Part shown: one piece after another, positions 47,214 to 64,000 of the stretch
Position numbering within the stretch: the first letter of the stretch is position 1
Layout of the letters: each line of letters starts with the position of its first letter
Virus record (IMG/VR): IMGVR_UViG_3300034358_000008
Location: 260,913-324,912 of that record
DNA length: 64,000 nt
Direction: 5' to 3' (one strand)
Program-made: the position numbers and the translations under genes
Notes under the pieces: model-generated
Seen by the model: the letters and a program-made list of their open reading frames with translations, nothing else
Database searches by the model: none
Told to the model about the DNA's origin: nothing

Positions 47214-47801
47214 ATGTCTATTCTCGCTGACTGGCAAATCCGGGACTTGTGCACTGGCGACAAGCCAATGATCAGTCCGTTCTACGCTGACAAAATGCGT
47301 TACATCGAAGAGGACATTCGTGTTCCCTCGTATGGTCTGTCCAGCTATGGTTATGATATCCGTCTCTCGGATGTTGGACTGAAGCTGTTCACTGACGTAC
47401 ACTGTATCGAAGTTGATCCACGCAACATCGATCCAAAGATCTACATCGAACCCGTAATCAAATACGCTGACGATGGCGCACCTTACGTATCGTTGCCACC
47501 TAACGGTTTCCTGTTGGGTCATACACCTGAATGGTTCGACATGCCTAACAACGTGTTGGGTAACTGCTTGGGTAAGTCTACCTATGCACGTGGAGCAGTG
47601 TCGGTAATCGTTACTCCACTGGAACCAGACTGGAAAGGTAATCTCGTAGTGGAAGTAGTGAACAACTGCAACCTGCCTGTACGGGTTTATCTGAACTGTG
47701 GTATCGCTCAGGTATTGTTCTTGCAGGGCGAACCATGTGAGTCTGGTTATGGTGATGGTAAATACCAGGGTCAGAAAGGTACACAGGACGCTTTGGCGTA
47801 A
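47214..47801 (+). CDS. dcd: dCTP deaminase
   Basis: SYGLSSYGYDIR, GKSTYARG, TPLEP.W.G, GIAQVLF, KYQGQ. Confidence 0.95.
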   Translation: MSILADWQIRDLCTGDKPMISPFYADKMRYIEEDIRVPSYGLSSYGYDIRLSDVGLKLFTDVHCIEVDPRNIDPKIYIEPVIKYADDGAPYVSLPPNGFLLGHTPEWFDMPNNVLGNCLGKSTYARGAVSVIVTPLEPDWKGNLVVEVVNNCNLPVRVYLNCGIAQVLFLQGEPCESGYGDGKYQGQKGTQDALA

Positions 47802-47818
47802 CTGTACAGTATAAAACG

Positions 47819-47848
47819 GAGTCCCTTCGGGGACTCTTTTTATTTTTG
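47819..47848 (+). terminator. Intrinsic terminator
   Basis: GAGTCCC-TTCG-GGGACTC-TTTTT. Confidence 0.85.
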
Positions 47849-47860
47849 TCTGAGGCTATT

Positions 47861-48472
47861 ATGCATTTTTACGTATTCACCGACGGTAAGCCGTTAGAAG
47901 TCCATAAGTTCCCGAATATCACTCCTGGATCAGAACAGTTTGAAGTCTGGACACCACCCGTACGGGAGAAACCTTACTTGTGGGAAGGGGAACACTTCTA
48001 CGGAATCATGTTCCTAGTCGATAAAGCTCAAGGGTCTGATAAACCTTCAGCTCAGCGTAAGATGCTGAAGATGGTATTGGATCTTGCATTCAATAAACCT
48101 GAAGATAACTACCCAAGAATGGTACGTGATCTGATCCCACTCTTCCCTGACTACTTTATTGTTATTACTGATCGCGGCATTCGAAGTCGACACTCAGTAA
48201 TACTGTCAGGCTGTGGACTAAAGAGGGATTCCGTTCTAACTGTACAATCTCAGGCTGTGGCAACTCAATGCTTCATGAACATCGTTCACAAGAACCTGAC
48301 CAAGAAAGATCTGACTACACAAGAGGCGTTCCAAAATGCATTCAACACCGGGATCTTCGACGAAAGCGAATACTACTATGCTCAAGTACCTAAGTGGTAT
48401 ACCTTCGCGCAAGAACATTACGGACCGTCAGACGATGCAACAGTTACACGAGCTAGGCTCGAGTTTGACTAA
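47861..48472 (+). CDS. Hypothetical protein
   Basis: GAGG RBS before ATG 47861. Confidence 0.7.
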   Translation: MHFYVFTDGKPLEVHKFPNITPGSEQFEVWTPPVREKPYLWEGEHFYGIMFLVDKAQGSDKPSAQRKMLKMVLDLAFNKPEDNYPRMVRDLIPLFPDYFIVITDRGIRSRHSVILSGCGLKRDSVLTVQSQAVATQCFMNIVHKNLTKKDLTTQEAFQNAFNTGIFDESEYYYAQVPKWYTFAQEHYGPSDDATVTRARLEFD

Positions 48473-49391
48473 CTACGATCTGATGTATCACATCTTCAAA
48501 GAACCTGTTATCGCCGATGTGCTCTATGATTTAATGAAACGTGATTACGAAAGGATGTGCAGAGAATACCCTGGGGTAGCTAACTCCATTCCTAGGGCGC
48601 GAAGTATTAGAGATCAGATGTTAACTAACGGTAAAAGCACCAAGCATGATTTCCCAATGTTACCACTGCGGGAAGTCCATGATGTATCTGGTGTGAAACG
48701 TTGGTTTGAAATGTTTGATGCAAAAGACATCGTGGTTGAACCCTCACTAGTAGGTGTTGAAGTTGAGTTGGTATATGTAGGTGGCACACTGCATAAAGCT
48801 GTTAACCGTGGAGACAGTCTAGAAGGTCTAGACATTACCATGAACATGTACCTCGTTAACGGTGTCCCGCAACAGATCCCTGAAACCGAACGTGTGAATA
48901 TCCATGGTAAGGTAGTCATCTCACGAATGGACCATATGGAAACTATGGGTTGGGAACATTGTTCTCCTCAGATGGTGGTGGCACACCATTTGATGAATCA
49001 ACCCGCCCATGGCACTACCGCGGTAAGACCCGAGTGTTTAGAGTTCATTCCTCACACCGTCAACATCCCAGGGTGTACGTTTGATCTGATGGAATTGAGA
49101 ATGGTTCTGATGGCATGGGACTTTGCGCTTACTCCAACAATCGTATTAAACGGTAAGTGCCGTGAAGTAGGTTCCATCGAAGAATACATAGAAGCCTTTG
49201 AAGAGATACACATCAAAGACTACATCTATCCGATTGAGGGTCTAACTTTCCGAGTGAATGAAACACAACGTCGTTTGGAATTAGGTTACACATCTCGATA
49301 CCCCGAGTGGGCATTCAAATACATCAAAGGGAAATCCAATGAAGGATCTAGCACCAGCGGTAGTACAGGCACTGAGAGTGGGTTACGCTGA
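48465..49391 (+). CDS. Degenerate NAD-dependent DNA ligase Ia + adenylation-domain paralogue (catalytic Lys absent)
   Basis: Colinear with the LigA N-terminal half, but KLDG is replaced by SLVG and there is no OB/HhH/BRCT. Start is uncertain (TTG 48465 or ATG 48483). Confidence 0.8.
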   Translation: MTNYDLMYHIFKEPVIADVLYDLMKRDYERMCREYPGVANSIPRARSIRDQMLTNGKSTKHDFPMLPLREVHDVSGVKRWFEMFDAKDIVVEPSLVGVEVELVYVGGTLHKAVNRGDSLEGLDITMNMYLVNGVPQQIPETERVNIHGKVVISRMDHMETMGWEHCSPQMVVAHHLMNQPAHGTTAVRPECLEFIPHTVNIPGCTFDLMELRMVLMAWDFALTPTIVLNGKCREVGSIEEYIEAFEEIHIKDYIYPIEGLTFRVNETQRRLELGYTSRYPEWAFKYIKGKSNEGSSTSGSTGTESGLR

Positions 49392-51462
49392 AGCCTGCTC
49401 AGAACTGAACGAGTTGAACTACCAGTATCACGTTAACGACGTTTCGGTTATCCCTGATCCAGAATACGATCTGAAGTTCCGTCAGTTAGTTGATATAGAA
49501 AAGCAATACCCATGGTTAATCGTTCCAGCTTCTCCAACTCAAACCGTTGGTCACGCTATTACGTCGGGCCACTTCCAACCATTGAAGCATCGGTTGTCGA
49601 TGTTGAGTCTGGGTAACACGTTCACTGCTTATGAAGCTGTGGATTGGAGTATTGACATTTCTGGTGATCCTGAAACCCAAGGACTAGAAGTTCGAGGTGA
49701 ATGGAAATTAGATGGCTTGAGTCTGAGTCTGGTTTACCGTAAAGGTCGACTGCTATATGCCGTTACTCGTGGTGATGGTGAGACAGGTGAGAACGTAACG
49801 ATCAATGCCTTGCAAATCCAAGGTATCCCTAAGGTACTCAAACATTGGACCTCGGTGTACACTTCGATCCGTGGTGAAGTCGTTGTTAATCTAGCCGACT
49901 ACAATGCTATTAATGACGCTTTGCTTGAAGCGGGTAAGAAACCATTCGCTAACCCACGTAACTATGCCGCTGGTAGTTTGCGTCAGAAAGACCCAGCTAT
50001 TACAGCTGAGCGTAAATTGATATTTGTGGGTTACTCGATAGATCATGAAGATGATGATACTGACCGTGATTGGTATAATGATCAGGAAACTCTAATCAAG
50101 AATGGTTTTGAGACAGCAGCTATTCCAGATAAGTTGAATCATAGCCTCGAGGGTATTATTCAAGGGTGGCCAGAGTTCATTGAGAAGATGCAAACGTTGC
50201 GTAGTGCCCAGCCCTATGAAGTCGATGGTATCGTCTTTAAAGTGGTTAAGCATGCTCACCGTAAATTCCTCGGTATGACTTCTCGTGCACCTAAGTGGGC
50301 AACGGCATTTAAGTTCCCTGCCTCTGAAGGCGTAACGCCCCTTAAAGATGTCGAGTACCAAGTTGGTCGTACTGGTCGACTGACCCCAGTTGCACGTGTA
50401 GAACCCGTTCACGTTCATGGCACCATGATTTCTAACGTGTCATTGCATAACCGCAACGAGGTTGCTCGTCTCCAGCTCTATAAAGGCTGTAGCGTACAAA
50501 TCAAACGAGCAGGGGATGTCATCCCTTACGTAATGGGTACGACTGTCGCACACACTGATCAAGAGCTTTATGAACCGTTGACACATTGTCCAGTCTGTAA
50601 CACTAAGACTTCTATTGTCCTCAGTAAGGATGGTAAAGAAACTGACAATTGCGATAATCGAGACTGCTATGGTCGCCAGATTGCACATCTTGAATATTGC
50701 ATGGATCGTGATGTCTTCAACATTAAAGGACTGGGGCCAGCTGTTATTAAGCTGCTCCATCAAGTTGGGCATATCACTGCGTATCAACCAGTAAAGATCT
50801 TTGATGTAACATTCATGCAACTAATCGGCGTTGGGTTGTCTGAGCTGGAAGCAGAGAAACTGTTGCGTGCAATTGCAGTCGCTGCCGGCGATCTGGATAT
50901 GACTCGGATGGTAAGGTCTTTTGGTATTGATGGTATTGCTAAGAACTCCTCTGAGAAACTAGCCATCCACTTCATGAACCTTGAGGCACTATCTACTGCA
51001 ACAGTAGATGATCTGATACATGTAGAAGACATCGGTAAGATTGGTGCTGCTTCTATCTTCGAATACTTTGATGAGGATCGTTCTAAACCCATCGAAGAGT
51101 CTAGCTACCGAAACTTCCGTATCTGCGATCGTCTGACGGGTCCTATGCGTATTGGACAAGGTCTGATGAGTGGGGCTACCATCGTTGTAACGGGTAGTAA
51201 GTTCTCAGGTCGTACCCGCAAGGAAATTGAAGAAGCTTATAAACGTTTGGGAGCTAAGATCACCAGCAGCGTAACAGCTAAAACTTCTATGGTTGTTTGT
51301 GGTACCAAATATACAGATCACAAGTTAGCCAAGGCTAAAGAGCTTGGTATTGCATGGCTTATTCATGATGCAGATAAAATCATCGAACGGCATGGTCCAG
51401 ATGAAATTACATTCTTAAACATTGAGGTTACACCTGATGGAAATATTAAAGGATTGGTATAA
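49339..51462 (+). CDS. ligA: NAD-dependent DNA ligase
   Basis: EWKLDG, TRGDG, RGEV, NPRN.AAGSLRQ, DGIVFK, VGRTG, Zn finger, HhH and BRCT. Confidence 0.96.
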   Translation: MKDLAPAVVQALRVGYAEACSELNELNYQYHVNDVSVIPDPEYDLKFRQLVDIEKQYPWLIVPASPTQTVGHAITSGHFQPLKHRLSMLSLGNTFTAYEAVDWSIDISGDPETQGLEVRGEWKLDGLSLSLVYRKGRLLYAVTRGDGETGENVTINALQIQGIPKVLKHWTSVYTSIRGEVVVNLADYNAINDALLEAGKKPFANPRNYAAGSLRQKDPAITAERKLIFVGYSIDHEDDDTDRDWYNDQETLIKNGFETAAIPDKLNHSLEGIIQGWPEFIEKMQTLRSAQPYEVDGIVFKVVKHAHRKFLGMTSRAPKWATAFKFPASEGVTPLKDVEYQVGRTGRLTPVARVEPVHVHGTMISNVSLHNRNEVARLQLYKGCSVQIKRAGDVIPYVMGTTVAHTDQELYEPLTHCPVCNTKTSIVLSKDGKETDNCDNRDCYGRQIAHLEYCMDRDVFNIKGLGPAVIKLLHQVGHITAYQPVKIFDVTFMQLIGVGLSELEAEKLLRAIAVAAGDLDMTRMVRSFGIDGIAKNSSEKLAIHFMNLEALSTATVDDLIHVEDIGKIGAASIFEYFDEDRSKPIEESSYRNFRICDRLTGPMRIGQGLMSGATIVVTGSKFSGRTRKEIEEAYKRLGAKITSSVTAKTSMVVCGTKYTDHKLAKAKELGIAWLIHDADKIIERHGPDEITFLNIEVTPDGNIKGLV

Positions 51463-56628: not shown

Positions 56629-57873
56629 ATGTCGTATATCAACCTAGCTGAACCAAACGAAACTCCAATCAAAGCTTGGGTACAAGGCGTTCCTATTGAG
56701 GAAGAAGCCAAGAAGCAACTCCGTAACATTTCCCGTCTACCGTTTATCCATAAACACGTAGCTGTAATGCCAGACGTACACTTTGGTCTGGGTGCTACCA
56801 TTGGTTCGGTTATCGCTACCAAAGGCGCTATCATCCCTGCTGCGGTAGGTGTGGACATTGGCTGCGGAATGGCAGCCCAACTTACTAACTTCGTCGCTAA
56901 CGATCTACCAGACGACCTCTCGGGGCTTCGTGCACTGATCGAGGCAGGTATCCCTCATGGACGTACTAATAATGGTGGACGTGGGGATCGTGGTGCTTGG
57001 GGTGACTTCAACGTAGTACTTCCTACCCTGAACGTAGAGATGGCTGCTGAAGTAATGTCGATCCGTGAAGGCTTCGCAAACTTAGCTCGCAAGTATCCAA
57101 TCATCTCCCGTGCGGTTGCGGGTGCATTCAACCATGCTGGGACGCTCGGTGGTGGTAACCACTTCGTAGAGATCTGTCTGGATGAATCCGATCAAGTCTG
57201 GATCATGTTGCACTCTGGTTCCCGTGGTGTAGGTAATGCTATCGGTCGTTGCTTCATCGAGAAAGCCAAAGAAGAAATGGTTGAGCGTGGTATCGAACTA
57301 GTAGATACTGATCTGTCGTATCTGGAAGAAAACTCCAAGTTCTATGCTGACTACGTCAATGGTGTTGAGCTGGCTCAGCGTTTCGCTAAGCTGAACCGTT
57401 CCATCATGATGCAGAACACTATCGCTGCACTGGCTAAGTTCATGGGTCGTCCCGTGACCACCACTCTGGGTGCTGTCAACGCACACCACAACTACGTGTC
57501 CTACGAGAATCACTTCGGTGAAGCCGTGACCGTAACTCGTAAGGGTGCAGTATCAGCACAGAAAGACCAGCTGGGTATTATCCCTGGCTCGATGGGTGCT
57601 AAGTCCTTCATTGTTCGTGGTAAGGGTAACGAGGAATCGTTCTGCTCTTGCTCTCATGGTGCAGGTCGTGTGATGTCCCGTAACAAGGCTAAGGCTATCT
57701 TCACCGTGGCTGACCATATCCGTGACACCATGGGTATCGAGTGTCGTAAAGACCAAGGCGTGGTAGATGAAACTCCAAAAGCCTACAAGGATATCGATGC
57801 AGTGATGTTGGCTCAGGCCGACCTCGTTGAGATCGTTCATACCCTCCGTCAAGTAGTTTGTGTAAAGGGGTAA
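56629..57873 (+). CDS. rtcB: RtcB 3'-phosphate RNA ligase
   Basis: MPDVH.G.G..IG, VGVDIGCG, GTLGGGNHF.E, HSGSRG, HHN, PGSMG, SCSHGAGR, DE.P.AYK. Confidence 0.96.
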   Translation: MSYINLAEPNETPIKAWVQGVPIEEEAKKQLRNISRLPFIHKHVAVMPDVHFGLGATIGSVIATKGAIIPAAVGVDIGCGMAAQLTNFVANDLPDDLSGLRALIEAGIPHGRTNNGGRGDRGAWGDFNVVLPTLNVEMAAEVMSIREGFANLARKYPIISRAVAGAFNHAGTLGGGNHFVEICLDESDQVWIMLHSGSRGVGNAIGRCFIEKAKEEMVERGIELVDTDLSYLEENSKFYADYVNGVELAQRFAKLNRSIMMQNTIAALAKFMGRPVTTTLGAVNAHHNYVSYENHFGEAVTVTRKGAVSAQKDQLGIIPGSMGAKSFIVRGKGNEESFCSCSHGAGRVMSRNKAKAIFTVADHIRDTMGIECRKDQGVVDETPKAYKDIDAVMLAQADLVEIVHTLRQVVCVKG

Positions 57874-58129: not shown

Positions 58130-59014
58130 ATGATCAAGCTCAAACTAGTATCGCATAACGGTCGTGGTATGACTCCACGTGAATGGACAACTATTGACGC
58201 TCCGGTGTTTAAAGGAGGTGAGGTTAATCCTTGCCTTCACATTGACATCATCAATGCTCTGCCTTATGCAGCTAACGTAACACTCAAGACTTACTTGAAC
58301 GACCCGGCTACTGGCTTTGAACTGATGTTGGTAGTAGATGCTATCCGTCAGATCAACCCAGAAGTAAAGCTATTCCTTGAAATGGGTTACACGCCATACG
58401 CCCGGCAAGACCGTGTATGCAATCCGGGTGAAGCTAACGGGATCGCCGTATTCGCTCGGGTACTCAACATGCTGAAGTTTAACGAGGTTCGTATTCTCGA
58501 TCCTCACAGCGATGTTGCTCCTGCGGTGATCAACAACTCGGTGATTCGTTCACTGGCTGAAGTGATCCAGATCGTACAAGACTACAATCCTGAGAACATC
58601 AAGGACACGTACTTGGTAGCTCCTGATGCAGGGGCACAGAAACGTGTGAAAGCACTGGCTAAAGAACTAGGTGCTGCTGGCTACATCTTTGCAACCAAAG
58701 AACGTGATCTTGAAACCATGGAGATCACAGGTACTCGATTCGATTCGGATACCACAGGTAAGAAACTGTTGGTGGTAGACGACATCTGTGATGGTGGTCG
58801 TACTTTCATTGCTCTGGCTAAAGCTATTCGTGAACATGGCGAACCGGCTAAGCTGGAACTCTGGGTTACTCACGGTATCTTCTCCTACGGCACTGAAGTT
58901 GTGACTGAGCATTACGATGCTGTTACTTCCACGAACACTTTCCAGCCTTACGCCTTGGGTAACAAGGATAACGCTGGTAATGTCAATCCAAAAATGAACT
59001 GGCTGAATATTTAA
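58130..59014 (+). CDS. prs: Ribose-phosphate pyrophosphokinase-like (NARP1 Adps-type ADPR-PP synthetase)
   Basis: F.GGE, PYARQDR, DPHS, APDAGA, VVDDICDGGRTF, VTHGIFS; paired with the NAMPT-like gene. Confidence 0.88.
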   Translation: MIKLKLVSHNGRGMTPREWTTIDAPVFKGGEVNPCLHIDIINALPYAANVTLKTYLNDPATGFELMLVVDAIRQINPEVKLFLEMGYTPYARQDRVCNPGEANGIAVFARVLNMLKFNEVRILDPHSDVAPAVINNSVIRSLAEVIQIVQDYNPENIKDTYLVAPDAGAQKRVKALAKELGAAGYIFATKERDLETMEITGTRFDSDTTGKKLLVVDDICDGGRTFIALAKAIREHGEPAKLELWVTHGIFSYGTEVVTEHYDAVTSTNTFQPYALGNKDNAGNVNPKMNWLNI

Positions 59015-59024
59015 GGGATACCGA

Positions 59025-60761
59025 ATGTCTACTAATTTCGAATTGTTTGCCCCAACCGTTGCTGACGGCTACAAAATGGGCCATGGTCCACTCTATCCAG
59101 AAGGCACTAACTTCGCTTACGGTAACGGTACTCCACGTTCCGACCGCCTGTTCATGGGTTCCAAGTCCCAATCGATTCACTGGGATAACAAAGTAGTATG
59201 GTTCGGTATTCAAGCAGTGATGCGTGAAGTACACGGCCTGTGGGAACGCAGTTTCTTTAATAAAGATAAGAACTCTGTGATCCGCCGTTACAAACGTCGT
59301 ATGGAAACCTACCTCGGTGAAGGCATGGTTGATATCGAAGCAATGGCTGCTCTGCACGATCTGGGCTACCTGCCTATTACTGTGCTGAGTATTCCAGAAG
59401 GTTCCCGCCTGAACATGAACGTTCCGGGTTACGTGATCTATAACACTGTCCCTGAGTTCTACTGGGTAGTGAACTATCTCGAAACCATCATGTCCTCGCT
59501 GATCTGGGCAATGATCACCAACGCGACTATCGCTTACGAGTATCGTCGTGTACTGGAGCACTTCGCTGAGCTGACCGGTTCCCCAATCGAGTCCATCGAC
59601 TTCCAAGGTCATGACTTTGCACTGCGTGGTATCAACAACCCATACGCAGCAGCCTTCTCGAACTCCGGTCACTTGATCTTCTTTAAAGGTACTGACACTC
59701 TGCCTGCGATTGACTTCGTAGAAGACATGTACTTTGCTAATGCTGAGAAAGAGTTCCTTGCTACGTCGGTAGTAGCTACCGAACACGCCGTGGCAACTTC
59801 GAACATTCTCTACAACCTCGAAATGTGGTTGCGTGAACAAGGTACTGCTCGAGCTGATCTGGATGTTGCAGCTTACGCTAAAGCGCAGTTGGTTGCTGAA
59901 CGTAAGTTCATTCTGGAAGCCATTACCAAGAAAGTCCCACGTGGGATTATCTCGTTGGTATGTGACTCGTTTGACTTCTGGGGTGTTCTGACTGTAGTGG
60001 CTCCTTCGCTGAAAGAAGAGATCCTCGCTCGTCAACCAGATGCTAACGGTCTGGCTAAAGTGGTGTTCCGTCCAGATTCGGGTGACCCAGTAGAAGTGAT
60101 CTGTGGTGTTGAGATCCTGACTGTATCTGAAGTCTCGGATCTGATTCAGGCAGGTAAATGGGTTACCGGTAAGTTCGTCAGCATCGATGGCGTGATCAAC
60201 AAGATCTCTCTGGAACGTGATGGCTACGAATATACTCCGGTAGAACTGACCGCTGAACAGAAGGGTGCTGTTCAGGTCCTCTGGGAGATCTTTGGTGGCA
60301 CGGAAACCGCACTGGGGTACAAAGTCCTGCACGAACGTGTTGGCTTGATCTACGGCGATTCTATCACCGTTGAGCGTACTCAAGAAATCATGCGTCGCCT
60401 GATGAAGAAAGGCTTCGCTAGCTGCAACTGGGTACTGGGTATCGGTTCGTACACCTATCAACACAACACACGTGATACCTTTGGCTTTGCTGTTAAAGCA
60501 ACTGCTATTCAGGTTGAAGACGTATTCGTTGAGTTGTTCAAAGCACCGAAGACTGAAGGGACTACTGCCAAGAAATCGGCAATGGGTTTCCTTAAAGTTG
60601 AACGTGCTGCTAACGGTGACTACGTACTCCAACAAAACCAAACCTTCGGGATTGATGAAATCGATACGGCATCGGGTGAACTGAAACCTGTCTATAAAGA
60701 CGGTACCTTCCCTAATGAAGTAACCTTTGCACAAGTACGTGAGCGTGCAGCTCGGGGCTAA
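59025..60761 (+). CDS. nadV: Nicotinamide phosphoribosyltransferase-like (NARP1 Namat-type)
   Basis: DGYK.GH..LYP, HDFALRG, GTDT, ATEH, RPDSGDP, LIYGDSI, GIGS, RDTFGFAVK, KKSA.G. Confidence 0.9.
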   Translation: MSTNFELFAPTVADGYKMGHGPLYPEGTNFAYGNGTPRSDRLFMGSKSQSIHWDNKVVWFGIQAVMREVHGLWERSFFNKDKNSVIRRYKRRMETYLGEGMVDIEAMAALHDLGYLPITVLSIPEGSRLNMNVPGYVIYNTVPEFYWVVNYLETIMSSLIWAMITNATIAYEYRRVLEHFAELTGSPIESIDFQGHDFALRGINNPYAAAFSNSGHLIFFKGTDTLPAIDFVEDMYFANAEKEFLATSVVATEHAVATSNILYNLEMWLREQGTARADLDVAAYAKAQLVAERKFILEAITKKVPRGIISLVCDSFDFWGVLTVVAPSLKEEILARQPDANGLAKVVFRPDSGDPVEVICGVEILTVSEVSDLIQAGKWVTGKFVSIDGVINKISLERDGYEYTPVELTAEQKGAVQVLWEIFGGTETALGYKVLHERVGLIYGDSITVERTQEIMRRLMKKGFASCNWVLGIGSYTYQHNTRDTFGFAVKATAIQVEDVFVELFKAPKTEGTTAKKSAMGFLKVERAANGDYVLQQNQTFGIDEIDTASGELKPVYKDGTFPNEVTFAQVRERAARG

Positions 60762-61480: not shown

Positions 61481-62611
61481 ATGGCTCCGATGGCAAAGAT
61501 TACATTTAAAGCTCTACTCGATTGGTTCATGGAAACCAATGCTCGGTATTGGAATATCCATGTACAAGCTGCGCAGTTCGATTCGCAAGAATACATCTCC
61601 ACTATGAGCCCTGCTACGGGTATGATCTGTTTGAACATCTCGGCTAACGCTACCCGCGGGTTCGATATGGATGATGAGAAGTTCTGGTTCTGGTCTCGGT
61701 TCCAAGGTAAAGAGATCTTCCTCGAAGTTCCTTACACGGCTGTAATGTGCGCAGTTGATCCAGAAACCGGTATCCCTAATTTGTTCCCGTACTTCGAAGA
61801 CTGGGGTGATATTGAAATGGACCTGCCTGATGAACTGAAACCAACAGATATTGAAATCATGCCTAACGGCAATCACCTCATCCGGTTTGGTAATAATACT
61901 TCTCAGGAAATGGAACCTTTGTCAGACGAAGAGGTAGAAGCTCTGCGTGCCGATATCCTCGCTCGGGCAAAACCAGATATGGCTATTCCCGACAGCGTAG
62001 TAAAGGTTCTCAACTTTGATGGTAATCCTGTTGAAGTTAAGATCCCAACCATGGCCGAGTTGGATGAACTTAATAAGCTGTGGCGTGAACAAGGTATGTC
62101 CATTCAGGCAGATGGTTTCACTGTTGGACCAGATGGTAAACTGGTAGTGCGGGCTAGCACATTGAACGATAGTGTGATTCACGTTGACTTCAAAGGTAAT
62201 AGCGTACCCACCTTCGATGGGGATGCAACGATCCTTAACTTCCCCGGTAAATCGGAAATAAAGATCGAAGAACCGAAGTTGCTGAAACACGATACCTTGG
62301 AAACCCGTGTACGGGATCGTCACTGGACTGTCATCGAGGGCGGTAAGACTAAACCCGAAGCTACTATGCCTTGGATCGATACAGTCTACCGTGAGAAGCG
62401 TGCACGCCGTGAAGCAGCTGAATTGACAAAAGATAAAATGGTCATCGGTAATGAGATGAAGTCTACTCAACCAGAGATTCGGTCAGATGGTTCTACCGGT
62501 GAGAGTTCGTTCTTCCCTAATCTGGATGTATCGAAATGCACTTGGCCAGGTAAACGTAAAGCCCGACCTGAATGGTTGACTGTACATAAAGGTGGTGAAC
62601 ATGTTGCGTAA
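61481..62611 (+). CDS. sspB: SspB-like ClpXP adaptor with long disordered tail
   Basis: ALLDWF...ICLNIS.NAT....MDD..F.F.SRFQG....LEVPY.AV.....PETG aligns with the SspB core. Confidence 0.8.
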   Translation: MAPMAKITFKALLDWFMETNARYWNIHVQAAQFDSQEYISTMSPATGMICLNISANATRGFDMDDEKFWFWSRFQGKEIFLEVPYTAVMCAVDPETGIPNLFPYFEDWGDIEMDLPDELKPTDIEIMPNGNHLIRFGNNTSQEMEPLSDEEVEALRADILARAKPDMAIPDSVVKVLNFDGNPVEVKIPTMAELDELNKLWREQGMSIQADGFTVGPDGKLVVRASTLNDSVIHVDFKGNSVPTFDGDATILNFPGKSEIKIEEPKLLKHDTLETRVRDRHWTVIEGGKTKPEATMPWIDTVYREKRARREAAELTKDKMVIGNEMKSTQPEIRSDGSTGESSFFPNLDVSKCTWPGKRKARPEWLTVHKGGEHVA

Positions 62612-63098
62612 CGTTTTAGTAAAGCAGGTTATTGTGGATGCTATCGCCCGGATGGAAATGGTATCCGATTCACTTGATCTGTGGATCGTAATAGCCATGG
62701 CTCCAGAAGTTGTTCCATTGGTAGCTGAGGCGCTCGATCCTGAACGCAACAGCGAGGCCGTAGTAATGGCATTGGGTGATGTAAAATCCAGGACTATGTC
62801 TTTGGGATTGGGCCCACTGACGCGCAATACACGTACGGTTGCTAATGATGACCATTTGTCAGTTACCCTCCCAGAGGGTAAGGTGGTTAACATTCCTTAC
62901 GCTGCTATTTACTGCACTGCTACCACAGGATCATTAGCAGACACACTGGTATGGCATCGTTCTACTGAACTGGGCCAAGACATTGCATACTTGGATATGG
63001 TTGAACCAGAACATGGTAGTCCAAGCTTCCATGGTTTAAGTTCTCCCAATAGGATCACTTATGTCGCCCATTCTAATTCACTAAAGGTAAATACATGA
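62601..63098 (+). CDS. Divergent second SspB-like protein
   Basis: MSLGLGP...ANDDHLSVT...VNIPYAAIYC resembles the SspB core beta region. Confidence 0.5.
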   Translation: MLRNVLVKQVIVDAIARMEMVSDSLDLWIVIAMAPEVVPLVAEALDPERNSEAVVMALGDVKSRTMSLGLGPLTRNTRTVANDDHLSVTLPEGKVVNIPYAAIYCTATTGSLADTLVWHRSTELGQDIAYLDMVEPEHGSPSFHGLSSPNRITYVAHSNSLKVNT

Positions 63099-64000
63099 AA
63101 CCCTATCTTGACTCGATTCAAATGATCAAAGACCTCGGCATCTTCAAAGGTGATCGTACCGGTACGGGTACACAGTCGATGTTCGGTCAGCATGAACGCT
63201 ACGACCTACGTAACAATAAGTTGCCTGTAGTCACCACCAAGAAGATCCACCTGCACTCGGTGATTCATGAACTGATCTGGATGTCTTCTGGCGATACACG
63301 TGTAGACTATTTGATCCGTAAAGGTGTTCGTATCTGGAACGAGTGGGTTAAACCGGAAACCGCCGTTTACGAAGATCTCAGTGAAGCCGAACTTCAAGCT
63401 AAGATAGATAAACATATTGGCGGCCACTGGGTATTGGCTTTCACCACCATCGAAACTGAAGATGGTATTGAAGTTCTTGACATCCAAGACTATCTGGAAA
63501 AATTAGATGCCGCAGCGGTCTCTGCTTTCTGGGGACAATACCCACAAATCACTGACCGCGAAAGCATTAAGAAAGTTGTACGGGTTAACCTGCTTAGCTG
63601 GAAAGAAGCTGAACAGCCAGTCAACCCGTTGGCCTTCTTTGGGCATGAGTGCTTGATTCGCCTACATCGCTTGTTCTTCAAGTCCGAACCACAGCGTTTG
63701 ATCGGTGGTGATCTGGGTGCAGTGTACGGTAAGACTTGGCGTAACATCGAAGACATCCGTATTATTCCTAAACTGGAATGGGCTGACTTCGAGAAACGTG
63801 GTTTTCAATTCGTCGTAGATATTCCGGGTACCGATGCTTCAAGTGATCGTTGTGTTGTACAGCGTCGTATCGATCAACTACAAGATGTAATGGATCAACT
63901 AGCTAATGGTCCAGACTCCCGCCGTATCATCGTTTGTGCATGGGACCCACGTCTGGTAGAAGATCAAGCATTACCGCCGTGCCACTGCTTCTTCCAGACG
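63095..64000 (+). CDS. thyA: Thymidylate synthase with large insertion; runs off the window end
   Basis: ATG 63095; DRTGTGT, TTKK, ELIW, IWNEW, GDLG.VYG..WR, DQL...DSRRIIVCAWDP, LPPCH. Confidence 0.95.
   Translation, partial: MKPYLDSIQMIKDLGIFKGDRTGTGTQSMFGQHERYDLRNNKLPVVTTKKIHLHSVIHELIWMSSGDTRVDYLIRKGVRIWNEWVKPETAVYEDLSEAELQAKIDKHIGGHWVLAFTTIETEDGIEVLDIQDYLEKLDAAAVSAFWGQYPQITDRESIKKVVRVNLLSWKEAEQPVNPLAFFGHECLIRLHRLFFKSEPQRLIGGDLGAVYGKTWRNIEDIRIIPKLEWADFEKRGFQFVVDIPGTDASSDRCVVQRRIDQLQDVMDQLANGPDSRRIIVCAWDPRLVEDQALPPCHCFFQT

What the first reader, a model, noticed from the sequence alone, without database searches (positions are those of the whole stretch)
48465..51462. Catalytically dead LigA paralogue that keeps the NMN-binding pocket, overlapping the intact ligase gene
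Seen: the upstream ORF aligns end-to-end with domain Ia plus the adenylation domain of the neighbouring LigA. Motif I EWKLDG becomes EPSLVG (adenylated Lys lost), RGEV becomes HGKV and DGIVFK becomes EGLTFR, and it stops before the OB fold. Yet domain Ia YH-x8-D-x2-YD (YHIFKEPVIADVLYD) is intact. Established: these Ia residues (E. coli LigA Y22/H23/D32/Y35/D36) bind the NMN moiety of NAD+. The ORF is uninterrupted and highly diverged, arguing for selection rather than decay. Inference: an NAD+/NMN-binding pseudoenzyme acting as a sensor, buffer, ligase regulator, or decoy for host factors that target ligases. This fits the NAD-centred gene set here (LigA, NARP1, Tad1-like).
Basis: partly seen in the sequence, partly recalled or inferred. 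Interest (0 to 1): 0.72.

Follow-up and report, generated by a model that had tools for sequence, protein, structure and literature searches.

The report
Dead LigA paralogue beside phage ligase
A giant nucleus-forming phage from peat carries, directly in front of its working NAD-dependent DNA ligase gene, a shortened copy that has lost every catalytic residue yet is kept under strong selection in a small group of related phages. It is a ligase-derived protein with a new, still untested job.

Summary
Window 48435-49391 (+) encodes a ~318-aa protein homologous to domain Ia plus the adenylation domain of LigA. It ends before the OB fold and overlaps the intact LigA gene (49339-51462) by 53 nt.

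It lacks the motif I lysine and the equivalents of D117, E173, R200, R208, R277 and K314. K290 is replaced by Arg.

It is not decaying: dN/dS is 0.04-0.15, the same as the neighbouring LigA. In all 14 related loci fetched it sits directly upstream of a full LigA.

The short proteins form one clade (100/99 support). An exhaustive profile search of 1.84 billion proteins finds only six 50%-identity clusters. Members include 201phi2-1 gp332 and Phabio gp331, both annotated as ligases.

The genome encodes chimallin, so this is a nucleus-forming jumbo phage.

The five NMN-contacting Ia residues are intact here and in 12 of 23 members. They were lost in at least four lineages that remain under equally strong selection, so NMN/NAD+ binding cannot be the family's core function.

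Best reading: a non-catalytic, co-expressed accessory of the phage ligase, possibly NAD/NMN-responsive in this lineage. The mechanism is inferred, not shown.

The parts
48435..49391 (+). Pseudo-LigA gene (about 318 aa; alternative starts TTG 48465 and ATG 48483; first ATG of the ORF at 48336)
   Evidence: ORF list; Pfam PF01653 E 3e-23; start inferred from conservation of the first Ia helix; dN/dS 0.04-0.15
48435..48641 (+). Ia-like helical domain; YHIFKEPVIADVLYD at 48486-48530 holds all five NMN-contact equivalents (Y22, H23, D32, Y35, D36)
   Evidence: Alignments; synonymous codon variation at four of the five positions; omega 0.09; weak Pfam Nlig-Ia match (E 0.15)
48642..49322 (+). Adenylation (nucleotidyltransferase)-like domain without catalytic residues: EPSLVG 48738-48755 (motif I, K to S, D to V), HGKV 48903-48914 (motif III, E to K), EGLTFR 49236-49253 (motif IV, K to R), LGYTSRYPEW 49281-49310 (R/K308 to E, invariant in the family)
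   Evidence: Residue table; entropy analysis; coordinates; AF2 model; Foldseek
49323..49391 (+). Low-complexity Ser/Gly/Thr-rich C-terminal tail, predicted disordered, variable between homologues
   Evidence: pLDDT under 50 for the last 18 residues; alignment
49339..49391 (+). 53-nt overlap of the pseudo-LigA 3' end with the LigA 5' end; AAGGG lies about 9-13 nt before ATG 49339
   Evidence: overlaps of 4-53 nt in all related loci
49339..51462 (+). Intact NAD+-dependent DNA ligase LigA (707 aa): Ia, adenylation, OB, Zn finger, HhH, BRCT; all catalytic residues present
   Evidence: Pfam; residue table; conserved Cys4 and other invariant columns
47214..47801 (+). dCTP deaminase, conserved synteny anchor upstream
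   Evidence: Pfam PF22769 and PHROG 1663; same position in related loci
47846..48472 (+). Conserved hypothetical gene (208 aa) directly upstream; its end overlaps the pseudo-LigA start
   Evidence: no Pfam or PHROG match; a gene of 200-230 aa sits in this position in most related loci

Best explanation
The ORF encodes a LigA-derived pseudoenzyme: an Ia-like plus adenylation-like module. It arose once in a sublineage of nucleus-forming (chimallin-encoding) jumbo phages, lost the whole nucleotidyl-transfer machinery and the DNA-contacting basic residues, and has since been kept by purifying selection. It cannot adenylate itself or seal nicks. It is always encoded immediately upstream of the intact ligase gene, on the same strand and overlapping it. 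I therefore infer that it is co-expressed with the ligase and acts as a non-catalytic accessory of it or of the repair/replication step it serves, in the manner of dead paralogues that partner active enzymes. In this phage's lineage the Ia pocket is preserved and may add NMN/NAD+ responsiveness, but that is a lineage-specific extra, not the family's core function. Shown: homology, loss of catalytic residues, selection, single origin, strict synteny, narrow distribution. Inferred: co-expression, partnership with LigA, any ligand binding.
For: Homology. Dead active site: K115 is absent in 22 of the 23 short proteins compared. D117, E173, R208, R277 and K314 are absent in all 23. R200 is absent in all but three, where the aligned Arg sits in a poorly conserved stretch. 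All 26 full-length LigAs compared keep these residues, apart from one R208N. These columns are among the most variable in the short family. Selection: pairwise dN/dS 0.04-0.15, equal to the LigA N-terminus and holding for both subdomains. Single origin: the short clade has 100/99 support and its internal branching mirrors that of the partnered LigAs. Synteny: in 15 of 15 loci (this window plus 14 relatives) the order is short gene then full LigA, overlapping by 4-53 nt; dCTP deaminase lies upstream wherever the locus reaches that far. Distribution: six 50%-identity clusters (299-467 bits), then a drop to full-length LigAs at 180 bits or less, in 1.84 billion proteins. Loss of the DNA-binding character of the NTase surface: the R/K308 equivalent is an invariant Glu, and mean net charge is -8.4 against -3.7. 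The genome is a chimallin phage (67% identity to 201phi2-1 gp105). The full LigA homologue of PhiPA3 is nuclear (PMC10643120).
Against: There is no direct evidence that the protein binds LigA or anything else. Adjacent, overlapping genes are common in phages and alone are weak evidence of physical partnership. One close pair (L012/L013) has swapped the adenylation-like part of the short gene against a nearly identical LigA, which argues against tight co-adaptation. Relatives such as PhiPA3 and Psa21 manage with LigA alone and carry no remnant of the short gene. No transcription or protein data were found: a peat RNA library gave small contigs on the dCTP deaminase and LigA genes but none on the short gene.
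Confidence: 0.4

Rival explanations
1. NAD+/NMN-binding sensor or buffer: the preserved Ia pocket binds NMN or NAD+ and reports or buffers NAD+ status, which is relevant because the phage also carries a NARP1-like NAD+ reconstitution pair.
For: All five Ia contact residues are intact in this protein and in 12 of 23 members, with synonymous codon variation at four of the five conserved positions. A NARP1-like pair lies at 58130-60761. Stand-alone Nlig-Ia proteins of phages have been proposed as NAD+ sensors (PMC9503650).
Against: The pocket was lost in at least four lineages that stay under equally strong selection. The Ia positions show only average conservation family-wide. The AMP half of the NAD+ site is gone and variable. 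Presence of the NAMPT-like gene does not track the pocket: Viktualia has the gene but no pocket. A stoichiometric buffer is implausible against millimolar NAD+ (my own estimate).
Confidence: 0.2
2. Decoy or inhibitor aimed at a host factor: the ligase-shaped but inert protein occupies a host protein or defence sensor that recognises or uses LigA.
For: It retains the LigA fold and some surface motifs while losing activity. The family is confined to phages. Several short-family-specific invariant residues (equivalents of E. coli positions 25, 65, 76, 122, 131, 150, 167, 308) suggest a new binding surface.
Against: No defence system or host partner is known to target LigA adenylation domains (my knowledge). 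The strict linkage to the phage's own ligase gene is not explained. No data.
Confidence: 0.12
3. Non-sealing DNA-end or nick binder: it recognises nicks or adenylated DNA ends without joining them.
For: It derives from a nick-sensing domain. The GDG loop and the G-x-D-x-T segment are conserved.
Against: It lacks the OB, Zn, HhH and BRCT domains that give LigA its DNA affinity. Basic DNA/phosphate contacts (R200, R208, R277, K290, K314) are lost, position 308 is an invariant Glu, and the domain is more acidic.
Confidence: 0.08
4. Residual or altered catalysis through another lysine or a different nucleotide donor.
For: A nearly invariant Lys lies in the LHKA strand. One member (P0028) has Lys at the motif I position.
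Against: The LHKA Lys is Arg in Phabio. Every member, P0028 included, lacks D117, E173, R208, R277 and K314, residues I know to be essential in E. coli LigA; they are invariant, apart from one R208N, in the full LigAs compared.
Confidence: 0.03
5. A decaying gene fragment or annotation artefact.
For: It is highly diverged from LigA and truncated.
Against: The frame is intact in every locus examined, dN/dS is 0.04-0.15, and the AF2 model is confident.
Confidence: 0.02

Closest known systems
NAD+-dependent DNA ligase LigA (E. coli LigA; the neighbouring gene 49339-51462)
   Same: Homologous Ia and adenylation-domain fold. Structural motifs are kept: G118, G137, G139, G286, L-G-x-T-S-x-x-P-x-W.
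   Different: No nucleophilic Lys. D117, E173, R200, R208, R277 and K314 are replaced and K290 is Arg. No OB, Zn, HhH or BRCT domains. It cannot be a ligase.
201phi2-1 gp332, Phabio gp331, Viktualia CDS0038 (GenBank: 'NAD-dependent DNA ligase')
   Same: Orthologues: 33-35% identity, same position before the full ligase, same loss of catalytic residues.
   Different: 201phi2-1 and Viktualia have also lost the Ia NMN-contact residues; Phabio keeps them. Their database annotation as ligases is misleading. No paper on them was found.
Stand-alone Nlig-Ia proteins of phages, proposed NAD+ sensors (Iyer et al. 2022, PMC9503650)
   Same: A non-catalytic LigA-derived protein in phages that can keep the NAD+/NMN-contact residues of domain Ia.
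   Different: Those are Ia alone and occur, with one exception, in phages without a ligase. This one keeps a dead adenylation domain, always sits beside a full LigA, and the contact residues are not conserved across its family.
Split heterodimeric NAD+ ligase, as solved for phage PR1 (PDB 9hu3, 9i5i; PHROG 3359/3498)
   Same: A roughly 330-aa phage protein made of the N-terminal ligase module (Foldseek E 4e-15; PHROG 3359 E 2e-30).
   Different: In a split ligase the N-terminal subunit should be the catalytic half and its partner the C-terminal half; this, and assigning the two PHROGs to the two halves, is my inference from their lengths, not tested here. In this window the N-terminal-type protein is dead and the neighbour is a complete ligase.
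Dead-paralogue partners of active enzymes ('prozymes', e.g. trypanosomatid AdoMetDC prozyme; my own knowledge)
   Same: A duplicated enzyme gene that lost its catalytic residues, is under purifying selection and is linked to the active paralogue.
   Different: Physical association and activation, the defining property, is untested here.

Membership tests
NAD+-dependent DNA ligase (LigA, EC 6.5.1.2) | Ia plus adenylation-domain homology | tested here: met
   PF01653 E 3e-23; PDB LigA adenylation domains E 3e-18; Foldseek E 6e-23
NAD+-dependent DNA ligase (LigA, EC 6.5.1.2) | Motif I KxDG with the adenylated lysine | tested here: not met
   EPSLVG here; Lys absent in 22 of 23 family members, Asp absent in all
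NAD+-dependent DNA ligase (LigA, EC 6.5.1.2) | Motifs III, IV, V and phosphate-binding arginines (E173, K290, K314, R200, R208, R277) | tested here: not met
   K, R, I, Q, M and H at these positions here; variable across the family; kept in the 26 full LigAs compared apart from one R208N
NAD+-dependent DNA ligase (LigA, EC 6.5.1.2) | OB fold, Zn finger, HhH and BRCT DNA-binding modules | tested here: not met
   The protein ends at the AFKY equivalent of motif V; no Pfam match beyond PF01653
Stand-alone Nlig-Ia NAD+-binding proteins of phages | Ia domain as a solo protein, in phages that with one exception lack a ligase | tested here: not met
   It has an adenylation-like domain and an adjacent full LigA; definition from PMC9503650
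Stand-alone Nlig-Ia NAD+-binding proteins of phages | Conservation of the NAD+/NMN-contact residues | tested here: inconclusive
   All five present in this protein and in 12 of 23 members; lost in at least four lineages
Split heterodimeric phage LigA (as in PR1, PDB 9hu3) | N-terminal subunit carries the active site; partner supplies only the C-terminal domains | tested here: not met
   The active site is absent and the partner gene is a complete LigA
Pseudoenzyme partner of an active paralogue (prozyme type) | Paralogy, loss of catalytic residues, purifying selection | tested here: met
Pseudoenzyme partner of an active paralogue (prozyme type) | Physical complex with, and modulation of, the active enzyme | not testable with these tools
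   Needs co-purification and nick-sealing assays with and without the short protein

The most novel reading that the evidence does not exclude
In this lineage the dead ligase copy is an NMN/NAD+-responsive regulator. It couples the activity or localisation of the phage's nuclear DNA ligase to the cell's NAD+ state during NAD+-depleting immunity, working alongside the NARP1-like NAD+ rebuilding genes.
Probability: 0.15. Interest if true: 0.8.

Novelty: new variant of a known kind. Interest (0 to 1): 0.5.

Why it matters
No catalytically dead LigA paralogue turned up in the searched literature. The members in cultured model phages (201phi2-1 gp332, Phabio gp331) are annotated as second ligases. 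Recognising them as a conserved pseudoenzyme corrects those annotations. It also poses a tractable question in nucleus-forming phage biology: what does an inert ligase module do beside the real ligase, and is it tied to NAD+ supply, which bacteria attack and these phages rebuild? 201phi2-1 is an established laboratory system, so the question can be tested directly.

Tried and rejected
1. Complex prediction of LigA (alignment A5) with the short protein (alignment A4): no answer, score 0.00.
2. Programmed frameshift fusing the two ORFs: rejected. The frame offset between the genes differs in 2 of 15 loci, and two loci have only a 4-nt ATGA overlap.
3. Remnant of the short gene in PhiPA3 or Psa21: none found with relaxed tblastn.
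4. Origin of the duplication: AU tests reject neither 'short plus partnered LigAs form one clade' (p 0.157) nor 'short plus PhiPA3 LigA form one clade' (p 0.46). In-place duplication versus an older or foreign copy stays open.
5. Correlation of Ia-pocket retention with a NAMPT-like gene: no clean pattern in 6 genomes.
6. Transcription evidence: a peat metatranscriptome holds only three small contigs, on the dCTP deaminase and LigA genes and none on the short gene. This is too sparse, and DNA carry-over is not excluded.
7. Literature: nothing found on gp332, on pseudo-ligases or on the PR1 ligase paper. No supplementary files are held for the 201phi2-1 transcriptome paper.
10. Mapping the family-specific conserved residues onto 3D was not possible because model coordinates are not returned.
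Full report
**What is there.**

On the + strand an uninterrupted ORF (first ATG 48336, stop 49391) precedes a 707-aa LigA gene (49339-51462) and overlaps it.

- The ORF product aligns with LigA residues 18-326 at 25% identity (E 8e-15).
- It matches Pfam DNA_ligase_aden well above threshold (E 3.1e-23) and matches Nlig-Ia weakly.
- It matches the PHROG families of NAD-dependent ligases and the solved LigA adenylation domains (phmmer E 3e-18).
- An AlphaFold2 model built on 16 homologues is confident (pLDDT 82.9, pTM 0.79). Its best structural matches are all LigA adenylation domains (Foldseek E about 1e-22).
- The neighbour is a complete ligase with Ia, adenylation, OB, HhH and BRCT domains, four conserved zinc-finger cysteines and every catalytic residue.

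The likely start is ATG 48435 rather than 48465, because the first Ia helix upstream of the later starts is conserved in homologues and in LigA. The LigA start codon at 49339 sits inside the short gene's tail, with an AAGGG motif 9-13 nt upstream.

**It is catalytically dead.**

I checked E. coli LigA numbering against the K-12 ligA translation. I then tabulated the key positions in 23 short proteins and 26 full-length LigAs.

- The full-length enzymes all keep K115, D117, G118, R136, E173, R200, R277, D285, K290 and K314. One has Asn at R208.
- The window protein has S, V, G, R, K, Q, M, H, E, R and I at K115, D117, G118, R136, E173, R200, R208, R277, D285, K290 and K314.
- Across the short family these columns are among the most variable (50th-97th percentile of column entropy). 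The exceptions are the structural glycines and position 308, where the Arg/Lys of LigA has become an invariant Glu.
- One member (P0028) has a Lys at the motif I position but lacks the other catalytic residues.
- The adenylation-like domain is more acidic than that of the ligases (mean net charge -8.4 against -3.7).
- The domains that give LigA its grip on DNA are absent.

That these residues are essential in E. coli LigA, and what each does, rests on my knowledge of the Shuman laboratory's mutational and structural work. The Ia paper is cited as reference 119 in PMC9503650.

**It is a maintained gene, not a relic.**

A word-indexed search found 12 metagenomic homologues at 45-77% identity. 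The phage collection holds three annotated ones at 33-35% identity: 201phi2-1 gp332, Phabio gp331 and Viktualia CDS0038.

I fetched 14 related loci. In every one the short gene lies directly upstream of a full LigA on the same strand, overlapping it by 4-53 nt. It usually follows a dCTP deaminase and a hypothetical gene.

- Pairwise Nei-Gojobori dN/dS for the short gene is 0.04-0.15 wherever dS is not saturated, the same range as the LigA N-terminus and the rest of LigA.
- Split by subdomain, the Ia-like part and the adenylation-like part are similarly constrained.
- A maximum-likelihood tree of the shared region puts all short proteins on one side of a branch with 100/99 support. The branching within that group mirrors that of their partnered ligases.
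- An exhaustive HMMER profile search of 1.84 billion representative proteins finds six clusters of the short family (299-467 bits), then a sharp drop to ordinary full-length ligases at 180 bits or less.

The family is therefore small, phage-restricted and of single origin. Where the copy came from is unresolved. Relatives such as PhiPA3 and Psa21 have only the full ligase and no remnant of a short gene.

**Context.**

The window is the last 64 kb of a 324,912-bp virus record judged complete, from a peat metagenome. The genome encodes a homologue of the 201phi2-1 nuclear shell protein at 67% identity over its full length, so this is a nucleus-forming jumbo phage. In the related phage PhiPA3 the full ligase localises inside the phage nucleus (PMC10643120).

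**The NMN pocket.**

For this protein that is true: all five Ia contact residues are present. At four of these five positions (Y22, H23, Y35, D36) relatives use synonymous codons for the same residue, so the residues are selected.

It is not a family property.

- The five residues are intact (allowing the H23Y variant also seen in active ligases) in 12 of 23 members.
- They are singly altered in four members.
- They are replaced wholesale in at least four lineages: 201phi2-1/Viktualia, P0020/P0024, P0026 and P0027.
- Their family-wide variability is only average.
- The Ia-like region stays under strong constraint in a lineage without the pocket (omega 0.041).

The earliest-branching member (Phabio) and this lineage both keep the pocket. 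The simplest history is inheritance from LigA followed by repeated loss. The conserved function of the family therefore cannot be NMN or NAD+ binding. The AMP half of the NAD+ site is gone everywhere.

A lineage-specific role for NMN or NAD+ remains possible. It would fit the proposal that solo Nlig-Ia proteins of phages are NAD+ sensors (PMC9503650). It would also fit the NARP1-like PRPS-like plus NAMPT-like pair 7 kb downstream (pathway defined in 10.1101/2024.02.11.579819). However, presence of the NAMPT-like gene does not track pocket retention in the few complete genomes available.

**Most likely mechanism.**

What all members share is:

- an inert ligase-shaped module;
- loss of the DNA-contact character;
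- a set of new invariant residues;
- an unbroken genetic link to the active ligase.

I therefore favour a non-catalytic accessory role with the co-expressed ligase, in the manner of dead paralogues that partner active enzymes. NMN/NAD+ responsiveness would be an optional extra in this lineage.

This step is inference. No tool result shows binding, and adjacency alone is weak evidence. One close pair of phages has exchanged the adenylation-like part of the short gene against an almost unchanged ligase, which argues against tight co-adaptation. Rivals are a pure NAD+/NMN sensor, a decoy for a host factor, a non-sealing DNA binder, and residual catalysis; they are weighed in the Rival explanations section.

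**Novelty.**

The genes are already in GenBank, annotated as ligases. I found no paper that discusses them or any dead LigA paralogue. The survey of viral NAD+ systems describes solo Ia domains but, in the passages retrieved, not this architecture. I rate it a new variant of a known kind: a pseudoenzyme offshoot of LigA. It is moderately interesting, and testable at once in 201phi2-1 or Phabio.

Noticed in passing
window 58130-59014 and 59025-60761 (+): An adjacent PRPS-like gene (PF00156/PF14572) and NAMPT-like gene (PF04095). This arrangement defines the NARP1 NAD+ reconstitution pathway. The NAMPT-like gene is also present in the L006 genome, Phabio and Viktualia, but not in 201phi2-1 or PhiPA3.
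   Followed up: partly
window 56629-57873 (+): An RtcB RNA ligase homologue (PF01139, E 2e-121).
   Followed up: no
window 61481-62611 (+) and 63095-64000 (+): A protein with an SspB-like N-terminal domain (PF04386), recalling the SspB-like ClpXP adaptor noted in Erwinia phage RAY, and a thymidylate synthase gene that runs off the end of the window.
   Followed up: no
G000:C1:113779-115674 (outside the window): A chimallin (nuclear shell protein) homologue, 67% identical to 201phi2-1 gp105. The phage is a nucleus-forming jumbo phage from a peat metagenome.
   Followed up: yes
L012 3501-4433 versus L013 683-1558: Two near-identical phages (LigA 98% identical, dS 0.18) differ strongly in the adenylation-like part of the short gene (dN 0.094, dS 0.58), while its Ia-like part is identical in protein. 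This looks like a recombination tract inside the pseudo-ligase gene.
   Followed up: partly
window 48502-48588: A related strain in another metagenome (run X2) has an 85-nt patch too diverged to align at 90%. The patch covers the Ia segment that holds the D32, Y35 and D36 equivalents. The strain's residues there were not seen.
   Followed up: no
L010 1078-2022: An HNH_3 endonuclease-like gene is inserted between the dCTP deaminase and the hypothetical gene upstream of the short ligase gene in one relative only.
   Followed up: no
L014 2205-3469 and L015 2306-3532: The roughly 205-aa hypothetical gene upstream of the pseudo-ligase is present as two tandem copies in these relatives. 201phi2-1 has none at that position.
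   Followed up: no
window 48435-49391 compared with L004 3471-5513: The short protein is more similar to the PhiPA3 LigA N-terminus (32% identity, E 2e-39) than to its own neighbouring LigA (25%, E 8e-15). This may reflect a short PhiPA3 branch or descent from a different ligase lineage; the tree and AU tests do not decide.
   Followed up: partly
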